Of a DNA stretch of 64,000 nucleotides, positions 35,381 to 43,872 are shown piece by piece. Source of the stretch: Macrostomum hystrix (lineage: Eukaryota > Animalia > Platyhelminthes); contig CATNEN010000039.1 in assembly GCA_950097015.1 (NCBI GenBank), positions 15,190,001 to 15,254,000 on the forward strand. The letters run 5' to 3'. The stretch's first letter is position 1; each line of letters begins with the position of its first letter. The translations under genes and the position numbers were made by a program. The notes beneath the pieces were generated by a model that did not search any database, was not told where the DNA came from, and saw only the letters and a list, made by a program, of their open reading frames with translations.

Positions 35381-37230
35381 GGGTTGTTGTTGCTGCTGCT
35401 GCTGATGTTTCTGTAATGGATGCTGATAGGGTTGTTGTTGCTGCTGCTGCTGATGTTTCTGTAATGGATGCTGATAGGGTTGTTGTTGCTGCTGCTGCTG
35501 ATGTTTCTGTAATGGATGCTGATAGGGTTGTTGTTGCTGCTGCTGCTGCTGTTTCTGAAATGGATGCTGATAGGGTTGTTGCTGCTGCTGCTGATGTTTC
35601 TGTAATGGATGCTGATAGGGTTGTTGTTGCTGCTGCTGTTTCTGAAATGGATGCTGATAGGGTTGTTGTTGCTGCTGCTGCTGATGTTTCTGTAATGGAT
35701 GCTGATAGGGTTGTTGTTGCTGCTGCTGCTGATGTTTCTGTAATGGATGCTGATAGGGTTGTTGTTGCTGCTGCTGCTGCTGTTTCTGAAATGGATGCTG
35801 ATAGGGTTGTTGCTGCTGCTGCTGATGTTTCTGTAATGGATGCTGATAGGGTTGTTGTTGCTGCTGCTGTTTCTGAAATGGATGCAGATAGGGTTGTAGT
35901 TGCTGCTGCTGCTGATGTTTCTGTAATGGATGCTGATAGGGTTGTTGTTGCTGCTGCTGTTTCTGAAATGGATGCTGATAAGGTTGTTGTTGCTGCTGCT
36001 GCTGTTTCTGTAATGGATGCTGATAGGGTTGTTGTTGCTGCTGCTGCTGATGTTTCTGTAATGGATGCTGATAGGGTTGTTGTTGCTGCTGCTGCTGATG
36101 TTTCTGTAATGGATGCTGATAGGGTTGTTGTTGCTGCTGCTGCTGCTGTTTCTGAAATGGATGCTGATAGGGTTGTTGCTGCTGCTGCTGATGTTTCTGT
36201 AATGGATGCTGATAGGGTTGTTGTTGCTGCTGCTGTTTCTGAAATGGATGCAGATAGGGTTGTAGTTGCTGCTGCTGCTGATGTTTCTGTAATGGATGCT
36301 GATAGGGTTGTTGTTGCTGCTGCTGTTTCTGAAATGGATGCTGATAAGGTTGTTGTTGCTGCTGCTGCTGTTTCTGTAATGGATGCTGATAGGGTTGTTG
36401 TTGCTGCTGCTGTTTCTGTAATGGATGCTGATAAGGTTGTTGTTGCTGCTGCTGCTGTTTCTGTAATGGATGCTGATAGGGTTGTTGTTGCTGCTGCTGT
36501 TTCTGTAATGGATGCTGATAGGGTTGTTGTTGCTGCTGCTGCTGTTTCTGTAATGGATGCTGATAGGGTTGTTGTTGCTGCTGCTGTTTCTGTAATGGAT
36601 GCTGATAGGGTTGTTGTTGCTGCTGCTGTTTCTGAAATGGATGCTGATAAGGTTGTTGTTGCTGCTGCTGCTGTTTCTGTAATGGATGCTGATAGGGTTG
36701 TTGTTGCTGCTGCTGTTTCTGTAATGGATGCTGATAAGGTTGTTGTTGCTGCTGCTGCTGTTTCTGTAATGGATGCTGATAGGGTTGTTGTTGCTGCTGC
36801 TGTTTCTGTAATGGATGCTGATAGGGTTGTTGTTGCTGCTGCTGCTGTTTCTGTAATGGATGCTGATAGGGTTGTTGTTGCTGCTGCTGTTTCTGTAATG
36901 GATGCTGATAGGGTTGTTGTTGCTGCTGCTGCTGTTTCTGTAATGGATGCTGATAGGGTTGTTGTTGCTGCTGCTGTTTCTGTAATGGATGCTGATAGGG
37001 TTGTTGTTGCTGCTGCTGCTGTTTCTGTAATGGATGCTGATAGGGTTGTTGTTGCTGCTGCTGTTTCTGTAATGGATGCTGATAGGGTTGTTGTTGCTGC
37101 TGCTGCTGCTGTTTCTGTAATGGATGCTGATAGGGTTGTTGCTGCTGCTGTTGCTGTTTCTGTAATGGATGCTGATAGGGTTGTTGTTGCTGCTGCTGTT
37201 TCTGTAATGGATGCTGATAGGGTTGTTGTT
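35381..37230. repeat. Minisatellite with 39-48-bp units: GGGTTGTTGTT(GCT)nGTTTCTGTAATGGATGCTGATA
   Basis: Tandem array. The same unit resumes at 41719-41900, 43873-43960 and 46420-46460. Confidence 0.95.
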
Positions 37231-37264
37231 TCTTTCTTTCTTTCTTCTTCAGACCGCGCCCAAG

Positions 37265-40200
37265 TCAGAACAGCGGTTCTGATAGGGGCGGGGGCGGCCA
37301 GCGCCCCATGCTCCGCAGGAGGGAAATGGCCTTGCCGGGCTGGCGCAGGAGCTCCTGGTGGTCTGTGCCAACCAGGGCAAGGCGCTTTGCGTCGCCCCGA
37401 GGGCAGTAGAATATGGCGTGTTGCGGCGTGTCCACGGCTCCGCAGTCGGCGCAGAGTTCGTGTTCCGCGAGGCCGAAGCGGTGCAGCGTCTCGCGGCAGA
37501 GGGTTGTCGCGTTCGCACGCAGTTGGTTAGCAAACACGGTTTCAGCACGGTTGCGAGCATCCCCGAAGGTCGGCCAGGTGGCGCTAGGGAGGCTGCGCGC
37601 GTCAAGCCTTTGCCGCTCTCGTCGAATGGCGGCTTTGGCCGTGTCCAGCGGGATGCCTACGTCGAATTGCTCGAGGAGTACCGCCTCGTTTGCCAGCCCG
37701 TCCGCGACCTCGTTGAGCTCGAGACCGCAGTGGGCTGGCACCCAGCACAGTTCGACCCTTCTCGAAGTGCGGAGGAGATGGTGCCAGCAGGAGCGGCCGA
37801 GATCTGTCCGCTGCAGCAGGGGGCCAGCTTGGAGGGCCTGCAGAGCGCTGAGGCTGTCCGAGTGCACTCGTGCAGTTGCCCCTAGCTCTGGCGGCAGGTC
37901 GGCGATGGTGGAGAGGGCCTCACGGAGGGCGCAGAGCTCGGCCTGGAAGCTGCTGCATAGTTGCCCCGCAGCGGTGCGGCGTATGAGGCTCTGGGTCCGG
38001 CTGATAACGACGGCGGCGCCCCCGCCCGGGCCGGTGCCGTCCCGCACCGATCCGTCGGTCCAGGCCTCGATGTCGGTCGGTTGGCGGTCTGCAAGGGCCC
38101 GACGCGCTGCCTCCGCCCGGGCCTCCGGTCCGTCGGACCGGGTGGCTGCTCTGGCGACGTCCAGGTCGAAGGTGACGTGGTCATTCCGGGCGTCCCAGGG
38201 TGCACACCCCAGCTGCGTGTCGATGCGAGGGAGGCCGTCCAGGACCTGGCATACGTCGAGCTCGGTGGCTGCGCGGCGCCAGCAGCCTCGGAATGGGCGC
38301 GTGAGGTCGCGCACGTCGACTAGGGCCCCCGACGTGTAGGCGGTAGTGTCCGCACCGCGCTCAGCTTGATTGCGGAGGTAGGCCTCATGGCAGCGGCTTT
38401 TAAGTCGGGGCTGGGTGTCGCGGCTAAGGCTGATGCGGGCTGGCGTATCGGCGGGGAGGCGTAGGACCCTCTCGCGCAGGCAGGCGGCCCTTTCGGTGAC
38501 CAGGTGGCTGAACGGCGTTAGGTCAGCCAGCTTGAGGACTGCTCTAGAATCCGATGGGAGGATGCAGCCCGTGATGGCCCGGGCGCAGGCCAGCTGCTGG
38601 CGCTCGATGGCGAGGCGTGTGGACGGCGCAGCGCCTGCAGCCCAGACTGCACATCCGTACTCAGCGACCGGGCGGATTGTGCTGACATACGCGGTGCGTA
38701 GGGTACGCATGTCTGCCCCGGTTGTGCGGTGGCTAATCGCGACCAGGGCTCGGCGGCGGCTGGCCATTCGGCTCTTGACGGCGGCTGCGTGTCGGCCGAA
38801 GGTGAGCTGATCGTCGAGCTTGACGCCCAGGAAGGTGGGGGCGTCTTCGAAGGCGAGGGGCGCGCCGTTAATACTGAGGTTTACACGCTTTTTCCCCCTG
38901 GTCTCACGTGCATCTAGGCTGAAAGTGCCATAGACGCATTTGCTTGTGCTCAGTACGACCTTCCAGGTGCGGCACCAGTCTGCCGCGGCGTCCAGGGCTG
39001 GCTGGAGGAGGCGAGCACAATCGTCGAGGCTGCGGGCGGTGGCCAGCAGAGCCGAGTCGTCGGCGAAAAGACTCGAAGCGCAAAGTGGGGCTGCCCGCGT
39101 GATGCAATCCTCGAGATCGTTAACAAAGGCGATCCACAGGAGCGGGGCAATCACGCTGCCTTGTGGGAGGCCCTCGCGGAAAATGCGTTCTTTGCTTATG
39201 CAGCGCCCCCAGCGGACCTGGGCCCGCCGGTCGGTCAGGAAACCGCGGATCCACCGGATGGTGCAGGTTGGGACGCCCAACCGGGCGAGTTTGGCGAGCA
39301 GGGCTTTGCGCCACACCTTATCGTAGGCGCACTTAAAGTCCAGCAGGCATAGGATCGCTCGGTGGGCTGGGTGGTGCTCCAGGGCGTCCAAGATGTCCTG
39401 GCAGACTCGGCCGATCTGCTCTTCCGTGGAGCGTCTTTGGCGGAAGCCTGCCTGGCTGTTGCATAGTAGATTGTTAGACTCCAGGAAGTGGCGCAGTCGC
39501 AGCATGACCATACGCTCCGCTACTTTGGCTACCGTGCTGGTTAGTGCAACGGGGCGGTAGGAGTCCGGCTTGTTGGCGTCCTTGCCGCGTTTTGGGATCG
39601 GGACAATGAGGCTGCGTCGCCACTGAGTTGGGCAGGCGCCTTCCAGCCACGACTTGTTGATGAGGTTGAGCGCTCTGTCTTGGGTAGATGGCGGCAGGTG
39701 CTTAAGCATGCTGTTGTGGATAGAGTCTTGGCCTGGTGATTTGCCGGGCTTGAGGGCCCGGAGTGCCGTTTGGAGCTCCACCAACGTGAAGGGTGCGCAC
39801 ATGCCTGCCCTTTGGCAGTGGCACTCGGCATGCGTGGCCGCGTGCGCCTCCCGGTTAATCGGGCGGTCCTGTGTGCTGCGTTCAACGCGTGATACGCTGC
39901 TGTACAGTTGGCAGAAGAGTTCTGCTTTTTCCAAGTCGGTCCGGGCTGGGCGGCTAGGCGGGTGTCCGCCTATTTGCGTCCGCTCGATGGCGACGCTTGA
40001 GCGTGGTGGTGGCCTGTCGCCGTACATGTTTCGGAGGAGTCCGAATAGGTCGCTGTTGACGTCGAGCTCTGCCGTCAGATCCTGCCAGGCGGTCTTTTTA
40101 GCCTCCCGGATGGTGCGGCGGTAGTGGGCTCTAGCGGTGCTGTAAGTTGCGATTTTGGCCTCGATTGGGTCTGATTCCGCGTCGAGGCGGGCACGCGCGC

Positions 40201-41662
40201 AGCTGCTTTTGGCGGCCTCGCAGTCCGCCGTCCAGAAAGGTTTGCGTGGGCCACGGCGGGCGCCGCGTGGGATGTTGTGTCCTGCGGCTCGCAGGATGTC
40301 GTGGCCGAGCTCGCTATGGAGCTGGTCGAGACCCGCAGTTTCACTGCGGGTTGCCGCCCTTTCGAGGTCCAGCTGTGTTAGTTCGTCCTTGAAAGCTGCC
40401 CAGTCTGCTTTGGCGAAGCTCCAGCGAGGGGCGCCGCGGCTCTGGCGGTTTCCGCTGGGGCGTAGCAGTGGGAAACTGATGGGCAGGTGGTCAGATCCGG
40501 CCTCCCCCTCAGTGCGCCAGTCGCTCGCGACAGTGCGGTGCATCGCGGCGGAGCACCAGGTGAGGTCCGGGGCGGATCGGCCCCCGGTGGCCGGGTTAGT
40601 CCTGGTGTGCTTGCCGTCGTTGGCGATGGTGAGCTGGTTGAGACCTGCCCAGGCCTCCAGGATCCGTCCGCGTTCATCTTCTTCTTGGTACGCGTCCCAG
40701 GTGCCGTGCCCGTTAAAGTCCCCTCCGATTACCGAACGGTGGTGCTGCGGGATCAGGTGGAGTGGCGGTTGCCAGTTGTCCTGGCGTTGGGCACTGGTTG
40801 GTGGCGCGTAGACCGACGAGAGCATGATGTCGTGGTCCTTTCTGGGCGATATGATGGTCGTGGCAATGTCAAGGAGGCCGCGGGAGCTATCGTCCGGTTT
40901 TGGTGTCTCTTGGCACGGGATATCGCAGCGGACCAGAATGAGGGTGCCCCCCCTCCCCGCGCCTGCGCCTGGTTGTTTGTTGCGGCGGGTGGCGGCTTGG
41001 CGTTCGGGCGCCGCTGCGGTCGCGGCTGCAAGGGCAACGACGGGCTGCTGCTGTGGCATTGGTGTAGGCCGTGTGGTCGGCCACGGCTCGTTGCGGCGGT
41101 TGCAGGCTGAGCGGCCTGAGCGGCAGCCTGCACACCACTCAGTGGCCCTGCCGTCCGGCCACCGAAGGCGGCACCGTGGGCGGGTTTGCTGGCGCCTGTG
41201 CACGGCTTCTGGGGCAATGCTTGACTGGTCTAACGGTAGTGGTTGGTCCGGTGTGGTGGCTGGCTGGAGCAGGTCCGGCTTGGGTAGGCCATCGCAGCGT
41301 GCGGCGACGCAGTACCCTTCCGGTGGGTGGTAGGTTTGCCCCGGCTTGAGCTTGGTTTCCTGCAGGAGAGCCGCTGCTGGTTTGTGACGGTGGAGCCACG
41401 CGGCCAACTCCGTGGAACGGGCTTTGATGCCGTTGCAGTTGAACTGCAGAACACGAAGTAGATGGCCGGGCTCCTCCCCGTCACTGGGTCGCTGGCGGCA
41501 GTGGGGGCGGCGGCGCCGTGGGCGGCGGCGGCTGGCTTGTGGCGCCTCGCCACCGCGAAGGCGCAGCACGAGGTGCAATTCGTCCCCCTCGGCAGGTAAT
41601 GTTAATGGAAGTGTCCGGTATTTGTTGCGGAGGCTTGTCTGAGTGGTAGAGCAATTAGTCAT
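37265..41662 (-). CDS. LINE polyprotein (1465 aa): ubiquitin-tail leader, APE endonuclease, reverse transcriptase, RNase H, C-terminal zinc motif
   Basis: Endonuclease: QFNCNG, LQETKL, GGDFNGH, SAPDLT, GSDHLPI. RT: SYRPVALTS, QAGFR, GLPQGSVIAP, FADD, FLG. RNase H: WTDGS, ELCAL, SDSLS, WVPAHCG..NEVAD. Zinc motif CADC...H...C. Confidence 0.95.
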   Translation of the reverse strand: MTNCSTTQTSLRNKYRTLPLTLPAEGDELHLVLRLRGGEAPQASRRRPRRRRPHCRQRPSDGEEPGHLLRVLQFNCNGIKARSTELAAWLHRHKPAAALLQETKLKPGQTYHPPEGYCVAARCDGLPKPDLLQPATTPDQPLPLDQSSIAPEAVHRRQQTRPRCRLRWPDGRATEWCAGCRSGRSACNRRNEPWPTTRPTPMPQQQPVVALAAATAAAPERQAATRRNKQPGAGAGRGGTLILVRCDIPCQETPKPDDSSRGLLDIATTIISPRKDHDIMLSSVYAPPTSAQRQDNWQPPLHLIPQHHRSVIGGDFNGHGTWDAYQEEDERGRILEAWAGLNQLTIANDGKHTRTNPATGGRSAPDLTWCSAAMHRTVASDWRTEGEAGSDHLPISFPLLRPSGNRQSRGAPRWSFAKADWAAFKDELTQLDLERAATRSETAGLDQLHSELGHDILRAAGHNIPRGARRGPRKPFWTADCEAAKSSCARARLDAESDPIEAKIATYSTARAHYRRTIREAKKTAWQDLTAELDVNSDLFGLLRNMYGDRPPPRSSVAIERTQIGGHPPSRPARTDLEKAELFCQLYSSVSRVERSTQDRPINREAHAATHAECHCQRAGMCAPFTLVELQTALRALKPGKSPGQDSIHNSMLKHLPPSTQDRALNLINKSWLEGACPTQWRRSLIVPIPKRGKDANKPDSYRPVALTSTVAKVAERMVMLRLRHFLESNNLLCNSQAGFRQRRSTEEQIGRVCQDILDALEHHPAHRAILCLLDFKCAYDKVWRKALLAKLARLGVPTCTIRWIRGFLTDRRAQVRWGRCISKERIFREGLPQGSVIAPLLWIAFVNDLEDCITRAAPLCASSLFADDSALLATARSLDDCARLLQPALDAAADWCRTWKVVLSTSKCVYGTFSLDARETRGKKRVNLSINGAPLAFEDAPTFLGVKLDDQLTFGRHAAAVKSRMASRRRALVAISHRTTGADMRTLRTAYVSTIRPVAEYGCAVWAAGAAPSTRLAIERQQLACARAITGCILPSDSRAVLKLADLTPFSHLVTERAACLRERVLRLPADTPARISLSRDTQPRLKSRCHEAYLRNQAERGADTTAYTSGALVDVRDLTRPFRGCWRRAATELDVCQVLDGLPRIDTQLGCAPWDARNDHVTFDLDVARAATRSDGPEARAEAARRALADRQPTDIEAWTDGSVRDGTGPGGGAAVVISRTQSLIRRTAAGQLCSSFQAELCALREALSTIADLPPELGATARVHSDSLSALQALQAGPLLQRTDLGRSCWHHLLRTSRRVELCWVPAHCGLELNEVADGLANEAVLLEQFDVGIPLDTAKAAIRRERQRLDARSLPSATWPTFGDARNRAETVFANQLRANATTLCRETLHRFGLAEHELCADCGAVDTPQHAIFYCPRGDAKRLALVGTDHQELLRQPGKAISLLRSMGRWPPPPLSEPLF

Positions 41663-41718
41663 CTGGAGCTTGCTCCAGTTGTTCAGGGACCCGGCGTGAA
41701 CGGTGCTCCTTTGTCCCC
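41648..41718 (-). ncRNA. HDV-like self-cleaving ribozyme at the LINE 5' end
   Basis: On the - strand: P1 GGGGAC/GTCCCT (G1-U wobble), P2 GGAGCA/TGCTCT, P3 CCG/CGG, L3 TTCACGC, P1.1 TC/GA, P4 CTGGAGC/GCTCCAG, J4/2 CTAA holding the catalytic C. G1 sits exactly at the TSD junction. Confidence 0.88.
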
Positions 41719-41904
41719 AGGGTTGTTGTTGCTGCTGCTGCTGTTTCTGTAATGGATGCTGATAGGGTTGTTGTTGCTGCTGCTGTTTCTGTAATGGATG
41801 CTGATAGGGTTGTTGTTGCTGCTGCTGCTGCTGTTTCTGTAATAGATGCTGATAGGGTTGTTGTTGCTGCTGCTGCTGTTGTTGTTGTTGTTGTTGTTGT
41901 TGCT

Positions 41905-43872
41905 AATCTGCACGTCGCATCAAAGCTGTTCCTTCTTGTTCCACTCCTTCTTCAGCCACTCCCAGTACCTGAGGGCCCCGGACTCGTTAGCCCAGAGGTC
42001 CGAGAGTGACATGACGTCCAGGTTCTGCCGGATCTGCCAGGTGGCTGGGCAGTCCACCAGATGGGTGACCGTCTCCTCAGCCGTGCCGCAACTGCGGCAG
42101 GTGTCGACCTCGGCCTTGCCTATTCGCACTCTGTAGCTGTTACGTTCTAGCGAGTGGCCGCTGCGGAATCTCTGGAAGCTCACCGCTTCGGCCCTGCTGC
42201 TGAAGCTGACTTTGCTACGGTTCGTGGCCGTCCCATAGGTGCGCTTGGACCCGTCATGCGTCCAGGTCGGGGCAGCTAGGGCCTGGTTCACCATGTAGCG
42301 AACGGTGCTAGCAGGTATCGGCTGCTGGTCCTGGTTGCCACTTGCTGCTTCCGCAGCGGCTTTATCCGCCGCCTCATTTCCAGCGTGACCGCAGTGCGCT
42401 GGGATCCAGGCTAAGCTGATCTCCTTGCCTTTTTCCTTCAGCGTCGTGACCTGCTCCCGGATCTGCCTGGCGAGAGGGTGGCCGCTGTCCCCCCCGAGTG
42501 CTTTCAGCGCACTTTGGCTCTCCGTGAGGATGGCGGCCCGGCTCCATTGGGCTTCCGTGCCGAGCAGCCACCTGGTAGCCTCCCGCAGTGCCGTCAGCTC
42601 CACCATCATGGAGCTGCATGGGCTGCCCGCGGGCGCGCGGAGCGTGATCAGTGGTATATTGGCCTGATCCTTGGCGTAAATTACGGCACTTCCGCCTCCT
42701 CTCCCCTCTCTCACTGATCCGTCGGTGTAGATGATCAGATCCGCATTGCTAGACCTCCTGGCCGTCTCGTCCGCCTTGGCTCTGTCCTCTTCAATGTTGC
42801 CGCATCTGCTGCCTTGTGCCCGGACCTCGGTCTCGTGCCAAGCGCTCCAAGGGGCCGTCGGCAGTTCGTCCGCAAGCCGGGTGATGCCATCAGCCTTTGC
42901 CTGGCGGAGCCCAGCTAGCGCCTGGGCCCGCCAGCCGAGGCGGCGCAGGCGTTGTCTGGGCGCTTCATGGGCCAGCTGCCAGCGCTTAGAGTGGGGGTCG
43001 GTGCGGCTGAGTCTGTCCCACTTGATCGCCCAGATGCTCCGGCAGACTTCTTGCACCGGTTGGAGCTCGCTCTCCGCTTTCAGCGCATCGATCGGGGTGG
43101 TGGCCATCAGCCCGGTGATGATGCGCTGCGCTGCTCTTTGGACGATCTCGATACGTTGCCATAGTTCCTGGCTGATCCAGGGCGACCAAGCCGCGCTTCC
43201 GTATAGGAGCTTGGTTCTGATGACCGCTATGTACGTTTGCCGGAGGAGCTTGGCATCCCAGCCCCAGTCGGAGCCCGCTAGCTTGCGCAGCAGGTTTAGG
43301 CGGCGTCTGCAGGCTTCCGTGATTTCGTTCAAGTGCGGCCGGAAAGAGAGTTTTCTGTCAAAAGTGACTCCCAGGAATTTGGGCGTGTCTACCCACTGAA
43401 GCGGCGAGTCGTTGAGGAGGACTGGTTCCAGCGGGGGGCGGGCCGCCGGGTCGCTGGAGAAAAGCGTGAGCGAACACTTTCCTGTCGCCACCGGCATCTT
43501 CCAGCGTCTGCTCCATTCTGCAATGATGTCTATCGCTCTGCGGTTGATGTCCGTTGCTCTTTGCACGCCAGCGTCGCTGGCCCAGGTAGCGAGGTCGTCG
43601 GCGAATCCGCTGGTGTTGAGGCCTGGTACCTGATCAAGCTCCTCTAGCAGGTCGTCCATATACACCACGAAGAGAATGGGGGACAGCAACGAGCCTTGCG
43701 GCAGCCCTTGGTAGAAGATACGCTTCCTACTGTCCACCCCCCCCCGACCCGGACCGTCGCCAGTCTGTTGCACAGCCAGCCTCGCAGCCAGCGTATGATG
43801 GTTGCACAGATACCTTTCTGCTGGAGCTTCCAGAGCAGACCGTCCCTCCAGACCTTGTCGAAGACCCTCTGG
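41905..43872 (-). mobile_element. 5'-truncated I-group LINE (RT C-terminal half, RNase H, zinc motif)
   Basis: ORF 41920-43773 contains GLPQGSLLSP, FADD, KFLG, YTDGS, WIPAHCG..NEAAD and CRSC...H..DC. Frameshift at the poly-C near 43740. The (CAA)n tail merges into the satellite. Confidence 0.9.

What the first reader, a model, noticed from the sequence alone, without database searches (positions are those of the whole stretch)
41549..41662. LINE ORF opens with a 38-aa leader ending in an exact ubiquitin C-terminal tail (LHLVLRLRGG): candidate deubiquitinase-processed retrotransposon protein
Seen: residues 29-38 of the intact 1465-aa ORF are LHLVLRLRGG (41578-41549). A basic RRRPRRRR stretch and then the APE endonuclease follow. 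The rest of the ubiquitin fold is absent and no 2A (DxExNPGP) motif is present. Known: this decapeptide equals ubiquitin residues 67-76, the tail after which UCH/USP enzymes cut ubiquitin fusions. Ingi-clade elements such as L1Tc carry a 2A ribosome-skip peptide at this position, downstream of a 5' HDV ribozyme. Inference: this family may replace 2A with a minimal ubiquitin-tail cleavage signal, so host proteases trim the leader made from the ribozyme-embedded start and release EN-RT-RH with a defined N-terminus (EAPQ..., Glu being an N-degron residue). The freed GG-ended peptide might also be conjugatable. I do not know of a description of this arrangement, but could not search the literature.
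Basis: partly seen in the sequence, partly recalled or inferred. Interest (0 to 1): 0.92.

Follow-up and report, generated by a model that had tools for sequence, protein, structure and literature searches.

The report
Ubiquitin-tail cut signal heading a LINE
A family of jumping genes that lands only in CAG repeats carries, just ahead of its DNA-cutting enzyme, a conserved copy of the last ten residues of ubiquitin without the rest of ubiquitin, most likely so that a host ubiquitin-trimming protease removes whatever was translated upstream, where related elements use a viral-type 2A peptide.

Summary
Residues 29-38 of the intact 1465-aa ORF (37265-41662, minus strand) read LHLVLRLRGG, identical to host ubiquitin 67-76, and a basic run and the APE endonuclease follow.

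- **Conservation:** Four sister LINE families in this genome (APE 41-47% identical) and two external database proteins keep L-x-x-V-[LM]-R-[LI]-R-G-G at the same position. The 20 residues before it and the residues after it are unrelated, and synonymous codons differ.
- **Phylogeny:** these elements form one clade (support 97) nested among LINEs that carry an N-terminal 2A peptide.
- **No ubiquitin fold:** only ubiquitin 64-76 aligns, and AlphaFold places the segment in a flexible N-terminal extension.
- **5' module:** an HDV-like ribozyme starts at the exact first base. The ORF stays open to that base, and three of the four sister families have no AUG upstream of the motif.
- **Target:** insertion is into (CAG/CAA)n, always in the glutamine frame (14 of 14 junctions).

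Cleavage after GG is inferred, not shown, and tail-only peptides are poor substrates for deubiquitinases. No RNA data could be obtained. The scan had already noted the same motif in a sister family elsewhere in this genome. I found no published description.

The parts
37229..41718 (-). Complete LINE copy (4490 bp), the only intact full-length copy of its family among the loci compared
   Evidence: The 5' boundary is shared by all copies. The 3' boundary comes from the copy alignment and the junction sequences. The other copies are internally deleted or truncated.
41648..41718 (-). HDV-like ribozyme candidate. G1 is 41718, the first base of the element, and the P4 3' strand contains the ATG.
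   Evidence: Sub-threshold Rfam CPEB3-ribozyme match at 41685-41718 (22 bits, E 9.5e-4). P1 and P3 are 100% paired with 3 compensatory pairs across families A, B and E. P2, P4 and J4/2 were read by hand from the sequence.
41660..41662 (-). ATG of the listed ORF, present only in the three youngest copies
   Evidence: Alignment A1: GTG in L004 and GGG in L005-L007.
41579..41659 (-). Unconserved leader, residues 2-28; its first few codons are still ribozyme sequence
   Evidence: No invariant column upstream of the motif in alignment A2. Only 0-3 of 20 residues match ubiquitin.
41549..41578 (-). Ubiquitin-tail mimic LHLVLRLRGG (residues 29-38); the proposed cut lies after GG
41507..41530 (-). Basic run RRRPRRRR (residues 45-52), a likely nuclear-localisation or nucleic-acid-binding patch; a basic run is present in all sister families
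40487..41449 (-). APE-type endonuclease domain (residues 72-392)
   Evidence: Pfam PF03372 and PF14529. AlphaFold core pLDDT is above 90 from about residue 68.
41102..41173 (-). Conserved four-Cys insertion inside the endonuclease (C-x12-C-x2-C-x6-C); possible zinc knuckle and candidate target-recognition element
   Evidence: Invariant C, W and R columns in alignment A2. pLDDT is 50-70.
38894..39598 (-). Reverse transcriptase domain (residues 689-923)
   Evidence: Pfam PF00078, E 1.5e-31.
37682..38074 (-). RNase H domain (residues 1197-1327)
   Evidence: Pfam PF00075, E 4.6e-10.
37229..37264 (-). Short 3' UTR ending in a (GAA/GAAA)n tail
   Evidence: The 3' ends of several copies were compared.
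41719..41728 (-). Upstream copy of the 10-bp target-site duplication CAACAACCCT
   Evidence: Read directly from the sequence.
37219..37228 (-). Downstream copy of the target-site duplication
   Evidence: the tandem-repeat array resumes at 37228.
35386..37228 (.). Target: a 42-45-bp minisatellite rich in CAG/CAA, about 41 units here and 3.5 more units upstream at 41722-41883
   Evidence: Tandem Repeats Finder. In the LINE's frame it reads PYQHPLQKQQQQQQQ.

Best explanation
This is a single-ORF, APE-type LINE with RNase H that inserts into (CAG/CAA)n repeats.

Its 5' end carries a three-part expression module:
1. An HDV-like ribozyme that begins at base 1 and would trim read-through transcripts to the exact element end.
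2. A reading frame that is open from base 1, runs through the ribozyme and often contains no AUG.
3. A ten-residue mimic of the ubiquitin C-terminus, L-x-x-V-[LM]-R-[LI]-R-G-G, placed immediately before a basic patch and the endonuclease.

The most likely role of the mimic is a post-translational cut site. A host ubiquitin-specific protease, or another LxGG-specific protease, cleaves after GG. This removes whatever was translated upstream: a ribozyme-encoded leader from a non-AUG or variable start, or a host polyglutamine protein when the element sits in a coding CAG tract. It releases EN-RT-RNaseH with a defined N-terminus. In this it is a functional substitute for the 2A peptide that related LINEs carry at the same place.

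Shown:
- The motif, its protein-level conservation and its position.
- The absence of a ubiquitin fold.
- The clade's nesting among 2A-bearing LINEs.
- The ribozyme-like fold.
- The CAG targeting and the fixed glutamine phase.

Inferred: the cleavage itself, the enzyme, and where translation starts.
For: 1. **Conservation against diverged flanks.** Five families in this genome (APE 41-47% identical to the window's) and external proteins P0003 and P0025 keep the motif. Identity to ubiquitin is 6-10 of the last 10 residues but 0-3 of the preceding 20.
2. **Selection acts on the protein.** Invariant residues use different codons among families: Arg is CGC, CGT, CGA, AGG or CGG; Gly is GGT, GGA or GGC; Leu is TTG, CTG or CTC.
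3. **Decay in dead copies.** Degenerate copies have a mutated motif: L004 reads LVRRLRGG and L071 reads MRLRGR.
4. **Same position as 2A.** About 45 of 167 relatives have D(V/I)ExNPGP N-terminal to the endonuclease. The ubiquitin-tail rows form a single clade (SH-like support 97) nested among them.
5. **Accessibility.** Residues 1-63 have pLDDT below 50, while the endonuclease core is above 90.
6. **Residue after GG.** It is E, N, H, D, D, N and D in the seven lineages, never Pro.
7. **Need for a removal device.** Families B, D and E have no AUG between base 1 and the motif, apart from the motif's own Met in D and E. Starting at the next Met would delete the first catalytic strand of the endonuclease. 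The frame is open from base 1.
8. **Glutamine phase.** In all 14 junctions with five or more CAG/CAA codons the repeat is in the glutamine phase of the LINE ORF. External protein P0025 is an in-frame fusion of a polyQ-rich protein with two C2H2-pattern zinc fingers to such a LINE.
Against: - No cleavage has been observed, and no RNA or protein data could be obtained.
- Cellular DUBs bind the globular body of ubiquitin through an exosite. Short LRGG peptide substrates are 'very poorly hydrolysed' (bioRxiv 10.1101/2020.01.30.926881), and the ubiquitin body is absent here.
- Conservation of L at -10 and V at -7 is not explained by what is known of the DUB active-site cleft.
- If the ribozyme cleaves efficiently, upstream host translation cannot reach the ORF.
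- Six of the 20 junctions have in-frame stops just upstream.
- The families are low-copy and come from one genome plus two database proteins, so the number of independent lineages is small.
Confidence: 0.55

Rival explanations
1. The motif is a conserved linear motif with a role other than DUB cleavage. It could be a site for a different LxGG-type cysteine protease. It could also be a docking mimic for proteins that recognise the ubiquitin tail, acting without cleavage or only after cleavage by something else.
For: Conservation reaches to positions -10 and -7, beyond the usual P5-P1 contacts. Tail-only peptides are poor DUB substrates. The segment is predicted to be flexible, as short linear motifs usually are.
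Against: The match is specifically to the ubiquitin C-terminus, including the terminal GG. It sits exactly where relatives place a peptide-separating 2A. No protease domain is encoded by the element itself.
Confidence: 0.2
2. The codon at position -6 (ATG in families D and E and in P0003, CTG in A and B) is the real start codon. The protein would begin M/L-R-L-R-G-G, and the apparent ubiquitin tail would be start-site context plus an N-terminal basic peptide that is never cleaved.
For: In families D and E this is the only ATG upstream of the endonuclease. CTG is a common near-cognate start codon (established knowledge).
Against: Family C has CTC at that codon. L at -10 and V at -7, which lie upstream of it, are invariant at the amino-acid level with synonymous codon changes. 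The youngest A copies have an ATG 33 codons further upstream. This idea does not explain why R-L-R-G-G itself is conserved.
Confidence: 0.07
3. The motif is a decaying relic of a whole ubiquitin captured by an ancestor, or an RNA-level element, and has no present protein function.
For: Ubiquitin capture by RNA viruses is known (established knowledge). The three residues R-T-L in family A sit at the same spacing from the motif as ubiquitin R54-L56.
Against: The flanks are saturated with changes while the motif is kept in seven lineages. Synonymous sites vary, which excludes an RNA-level constraint. DNA similarity to host ubiquitin genes is limited to 21-27 nt. None of the 167 relatives has a whole ubiquitin.
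Confidence: 0.04

Closest known systems
N-terminal 2A (StopGo) peptides of single-ORF APE-type LINEs (L1Tc/Ingi and many metazoan elements; Odon et al. 2013, PMC3708506; PMC3894237)
   Same: [quoted passage not shown] Same element type (APE-RT-RNase H). In L1Tc the 2A likewise lies downstream of a 5' HDV-like ribozyme. The elements here are phylogenetically nested among 2A-bearing ones.
   Different: There is no D(V/I)ExNPGP motif. Separation would be post-translational proteolysis by a host enzyme rather than co-translational ribosome skipping. The PHD-like zinc finger that follows 2A in the nearest relatives is absent.
Natural linear ubiquitin fusions (polyubiquitin, Ub-L40, Ub-S27a) and ubiquitin insertions in pestivirus polyproteins, all processed by host DUBs
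   Same: The same LRLRGG-then-X junction, with a non-Pro residue after GG. The same logic of using host ubiquitin hydrolases to liberate a downstream protein. The host's own Ub-S27a and Ub-L40 genes carry the identical tail.
   Different: Those fusions contain the entire 76-residue ubiquitin fold. Here only the last ten residues are present, which is what makes efficient DUB cleavage uncertain.
LxGG cleavage sites of viral papain-like proteases (coronavirus PLpro, adenovirus protease)
   Same: A short linear ubiquitin-tail-like site is cut without an upstream ubiquitin fold.
   Different: Those sites are cut by a protease encoded by the virus itself. This LINE encodes no protease domain.
R2, RTE and L1Tc LINEs with 5' HDV-like ribozymes, and microsatellite-specific LINEs
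   Same: A ribozyme at the exact 5' end of a target-specific element that is probably co-transcribed with its target. AUG-poor 5' ORFs are also typical of R2 (my own knowledge; PMC3774820 and PMC3185411 were listed but not read).
   Different: The target here is (CAG/CAA)n, with a fixed glutamine phase and a 10-bp stagger. The ribozyme is itself translated as part of the open frame leading to the ubiquitin-tail motif.

Membership tests
Ubiquitin / ubiquitin-like domain (PF00240) | A beta-grasp domain of about 76 residues detectable by profile or sequence search | tested here: not met
   Pfam gives no PF00240 hit on the ORF. phmmer with host ubiquitin aligns only residues 64/65-76. Only 0-3 of the 20 residues before the tail match.
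Ubiquitin / ubiquitin-like domain (PF00240) | C-terminal LRLRGG tail | tested here: met
   Exact ten-residue identity in family A and 6-9 of 10 in the other lineages.
Linear DUB substrate | Non-proline residue after GG, in an accessible junction | tested here: met
   The residue after GG is E, N, H, D, D, N and D. The segment has pLDDT below 50.
Linear DUB substrate | Ubiquitin body to engage the DUB exosite | tested here: not met
   the consequence for catalysis is described.
Linear DUB substrate | GG-dependent hydrolysis by a USP or UCH enzyme | not testable with these tools
   This needs biochemistry.
2A / StopGo peptide | D(V/I)ExNPGP motif | tested here: not met
   Absent from the N-terminal regions of families A-E, but present in about 45 relatives.
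HDV-like self-cleaving ribozyme | Nested P1/P2/P3(/P4) double pseudoknot beginning with G1 at the cleavage site, a G1-U wobble, and a C in J4/2 | tested here: inconclusive
   The Rfam CPEB3 match is below the gathering score (22 against 35 bits, E 9.5e-4). P1 and P3 are 100% paired with 3 compensatory pairs, against 29-64% in the slid controls. P2 and P4 were read by hand. G1 is the exact element boundary.
HDV-like self-cleaving ribozyme | Self-cleavage activity | not testable with these tools
   This needs an in vitro transcription and cleavage assay or 5'-end mapping.
APE-type non-LTR retrotransposon with RNase H (I/Ingi-like group) | APE, RT and RNase H in one ORF, a C-terminal Cys/His motif, a target-site duplication and a simple-repeat tail | tested here: met
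   Pfam domains. C-terminal C-x2-C...H...C motif. 10-bp target-site duplication and (GAA)n tail. Assignment to a named clade was not tested.
Target-specific (microsatellite) LINE | Independent insertions share the same target sequence and junction | tested here: met
   14 of 20 distinct 5' junctions abut five or more CAG/CAA codons, and most of the rest abut another element's tail. Flanks on both sides are shown.

The most novel reading that the evidence does not exclude
The clade may be built for 'polyglutamine hitch-hiking'.

The endonuclease nicks next to a CAG run, with a fixed 10-bp stagger, so every insertion puts the LINE ORF in the glutamine frame of the repeat. An insertion into a polyQ-coding exon is therefore automatically in sense orientation and in frame.

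The host gene's promoter, cap and AUG would then drive synthesis of a host-polyQ-leader-LINE fusion protein. The ubiquitin-tail mimic lets host ubiquitin hydrolases cut the LINE protein free. The ribozyme converts other copies of the same transcript into the precise template for reverse transcription.

The released protein would start with D, E, N or H, which are destabilising residues in the Arg/N-degron pathway, and so might be deliberately short-lived.
Probability: 0.25. Interest if true: 0.88.

Novelty: new variant of a known kind. Interest (0 to 1): 0.78.

Why it matters
If the cut occurs, this would be a retrotransposon that borrows the host's ubiquitin-processing machinery with only a ten-residue tail. 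It would be a second, mechanistically different solution to the problem that 2A peptides solve in related LINEs.

- **DUB biochemistry:** it would show that a ubiquitin tail without the fold can be a physiological protease signal. That bears on DUB specificity and offers a very short cleavable tag.
- **LINE translation:** together with the AUG-less open frame, the ribozyme and the fixed glutamine phase, it gives a concrete and testable model for how ribozyme-headed, promoter-less LINEs get translated. This has been an open question since R2.
- **Host genes:** CAG repeats in coding exons would become a habitat where a transposon can be expressed as part of a host protein.

Tried and rejected
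**Negative or uninformative searches**
- Rfam at gathering threshold over the whole window found nothing. Only the permissive scan gave the CPEB3 hit.
- DNA comparison of the leader with host ubiquitin genes showed only 21-27 nt of similarity. There is no sign of a recent capture.
- A word-indexed protein search restricted to residues 22-112 returned nothing at the database's E-value scale.
- Exact look-ups of the ORF and of host Ub-S27a and Ub-L40 found neither in the collection, so the organism stays unidentified. The top external hit is a Macrostomum lignano protein.
- The ESM Atlas search gave only generic endonuclease clusters scoring below 0.9.
- Seven literature searches found no description of a ubiquitin tail in a retrotransposon. 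Three further attempts were rejected for term syntax and not run.

Further copies and host DUB genes could not be fetched, and complex prediction was not attempted.

**Other**
- The maximum-likelihood tree run timed out and FastTree was used instead.
It was rerun from a locus reference.
- Rejected readings: a whole or split ubiquitin domain, a 2A peptide, a structural strand of the endonuclease, and an RNA-level constraint.
Full report
**1. Observation**

The minus strand of window 37265-41662 holds an intact 1465-aa ORF. Pfam finds an APE endonuclease (residues 72-392), a reverse transcriptase (689-923) and an RNase H (1197-1327).

Residues 29-38 are LHLVLRLRGG (nt 41578-41549). They are followed by EAPQAS and RRRPRRRR. 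The host's own ubiquitin genes (polyubiquitin, Ub-S27a, Ub-L40) end in the same ten residues. There is no ubiquitin domain hit and no 2A motif.

The match is not chance. The degenerate DNA pattern for LVLRLRGG occurs 29 times in the 220-Mb genome, against 2 for the reversed control. Every hit is either a true ubiquitin gene or one of six copies of this LINE family.

**2. The element**

Alignment of the seven loci that share the 5' region puts the family's first base at window 41718 (GGGGACAAAGG...). In every locus it is preceded by CAG, CAA or GAA repeats.

The 3' end lies 36 nt after the stop codon and finishes in a (GAA/GAAA)n tail. The window copy therefore spans 37229-41718. It is flanked by a 10-bp target-site duplication, CAACAACCCT. 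It sits inside a 42-45-bp CAG/CAA-rich minisatellite.

All other copies are internally deleted or truncated. This is the only intact one found. A different, 5'-truncated LINE (28% identical in RT-RNase H) lies directly upstream.

**3. Ribozyme and start codon**

The first 34 nt give a sub-threshold match to the CPEB3 (HDV-like) ribozyme model: 22 bits against a gathering score of 35, E 9.5e-4.

Reading the sequence by hand, nt 1-71 can form:
- P1: GGGGAC with GUCCCU, including the G1-U wobble.
- P2: GGAGC with GCUCU.
- P3: CCG with CGG, with an L3 loop UUCACGC as in CPEB3.
- P4: a hairpin that contains the ATG.
- J4/2: containing C-UAA.

Across families A, B and E the P1 and P3 pairs are 100% standard pairs, with three compensatory pairs. 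Slid controls give 29-64%. Self-cleavage is untested.

The ATG at 41662 is present only in the three near-identical young copies. Older copies have GTG or GGG. The frame is open from base 1 and on upstream into the repeat.

**4.

A search of the genome with the endonuclease found sister LINE families at 42-51% identity. Every one that retains its 5' end has the same motif directly before a basic run and the endonuclease:
- SELIQVLRLRGG|NANAN
- DNLHQVLRLRGG|HDPLP
- GDLYTVMRIRGG|DGAAE
- EELNLVMRLRGG|DATAG

In the five-family alignment the only invariant leader columns are L, V, R, R, G and G of the motif.

A profile search of 1.8 billion representative proteins found two external carriers:
- P0003: NLLSVMRLRGG|NSDIS
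- P0025: NLHRVLRLRGG|DSNVT

Over the seven lineages, identity to ubiquitin is 6-10 of the last ten residues but 0-3 of the preceding twenty.

Codons at invariant residues differ among families, so the constraint is on the protein and not the RNA. Degenerate copies carry damaged motifs. The motif is therefore under purifying selection, while the rest of the ubiquitin fold is absent.

**5. Relation to 2A**

About 45 of the 167 related proteins collected carry a D(V/I)ExNPGP peptide N-terminal to the endonuclease, usually followed by a PHD-like zinc finger.

In a FastTree phylogeny of 124 endonuclease domains, the six ubiquitin-tail rows form one clade (SH-like support 97, one change on the tree). 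It is nested among 2A-bearing lineages. The immediate sisters have a degenerate 2A (NKPGP) plus a zinc finger.

The tree is rooted at the midpoint only. 'Replacement of 2A' is therefore the parsimonious reading, not a proven direction. The published view is that 2A characterises single-ORF APE-type LINEs. The one paper I searched for the word, PMC3894237, does not mention ubiquitin; PMC3708506 was listed but not read.

**6. Why a removal device would be needed**

Families B, D and E have no AUG between base 1 and the motif, apart from the motif's own Met in D and E. The next Met in family B lies beyond the first catalytic strand of the endonuclease.

Translation must therefore start at a non-AUG codon in or near the ribozyme, or enter from upstream. 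Either way the N-terminal extension is variable or foreign.

**7. Target phase**

I examined twenty distinct 5' junctions. In all 14 with five or more adjacent CAG/CAA codons, the repeat is in the glutamine phase of the LINE ORF. None is in the AGC or GCA phase.

Six junctions have in-frame stops just upstream. The phase is therefore set by the integration mechanism, not by later selection on each copy. The 10-bp stagger from a nick at the end of a CAG codon gives the recurrent (CAG)n-C|GG junction.

As a consequence, any insertion into a polyQ-coding exon is in sense orientation and in frame. P0025 is such a case in another organism. Its first roughly 290 residues hold polyQ runs and two stretches that fit the C2H2 finger pattern by eye, although Pfam gave no significant hit. 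They continue without a stop into the LINE leader, the motif and the endonuclease.

**8. Mechanism and its weak point**

AlphaFold, run with a 60-sequence alignment, gives pLDDT below 50 for residues 1-63 and above 90 for the endonuclease core. The motif therefore lies in a flexible extension rather than being packed on the enzyme.

The residue after GG is never Pro. In all seven lineages it is D, E, N or H. This is compatible with DUB cleavage and would expose a destabilising N-terminal residue. The latter point is only suggestive.

Against efficient cleavage: DUBs use an exosite on the ubiquitin body, and LRGG tetrapeptides are very poorly hydrolysed.

I therefore put the cut-site reading at about 0.55. 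The rivals are another role for the linear motif (0.2), a start-codon-context reading (0.07), and a relic or RNA-level explanation (0.04).

**9. Limits**

- As a result there is no expression evidence, no inspection of the external contigs, no host DUB sequence and no complex prediction.
- The organism is unidentified. The best external hit is from the flatworm Macrostomum lignano.

**10. Earlier notes of this scan**

Earlier notes on other DNA of the same genome had already recorded the same motif in sister families, the ribozyme and the CAG targeting. I reached the sister-family result independently, before reading them, and my results agree.

New here:
- The seven-lineage conservation table.
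- The phylogenetic nesting among 2A-bearing elements.
- The external carriers P0003 and P0025.
- The fixed glutamine phase with the 10-bp stagger.
- The disorder prediction.

I found no published description.

Noticed in passing
window 41102-41173 (-), inside the APE domain: A conserved four-cysteine insertion (R-C-R-L-R-x-P-D-x-R-x(2,3)-W-C-x-G-C-R-S-x-R-x-A-C) interrupts the endonuclease in all five ubiquitin-tail families. P0002 carries a similar but diverged Cys-rich stretch. It may be a zinc knuckle that reads the CAG target.
   Followed up: partly
window 35386-37228 and 41722-41883: A 42-45-bp minisatellite of about 41 units that reads PYQHPLQKQQQQQQQ in the LINE's frame. The same repeat forms large arrays about 1 Mb away on the same contig (C39 near 14.20-14.25 Mb). 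Whether it is coding or a satellite is unknown.
   Followed up: partly
window 41920-43773 (-): A 5'-truncated LINE of a different family (RT-RNase H only 28% identical to the element studied) ending in a (CAA)n tail. It lies head-to-tail directly upstream.
   Followed up: partly
L043, L045, L046/L047, L048 (other copies of the family): Most copies are internally deleted but keep both the 5' ribozyme/leader and the 3' end. This suggests non-autonomous derivatives mobilised in trans. L046 and L047 (C8 and C7) are a segmental duplicate pair.
   Followed up: partly
L048:~1060-1150 and L060:~1280-1372: Head-to-tail tandem insertions: a ubiquitin-tail LINE starts right after the (GAA)n tail of another LINE, separated only by CAGC or a similar short stretch.
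   Followed up: no
P0025 (external protein, residues 1-290): A polyQ-rich protein with two C2H2-pattern fingers runs in frame into a ubiquitin-tail LINE. It is an apparent insertion into a coding CAG tract in another organism.
   Followed up: partly
L055/L056 (family C) and L064/L065 (family D) 5' ends: The ribozyme cores of families C and D sit 40-80 nt downstream of base 1, with long insertions between P1 and P2. For family D I could not find a convincing P1 5' strand at the element boundary.
   Followed up: partly
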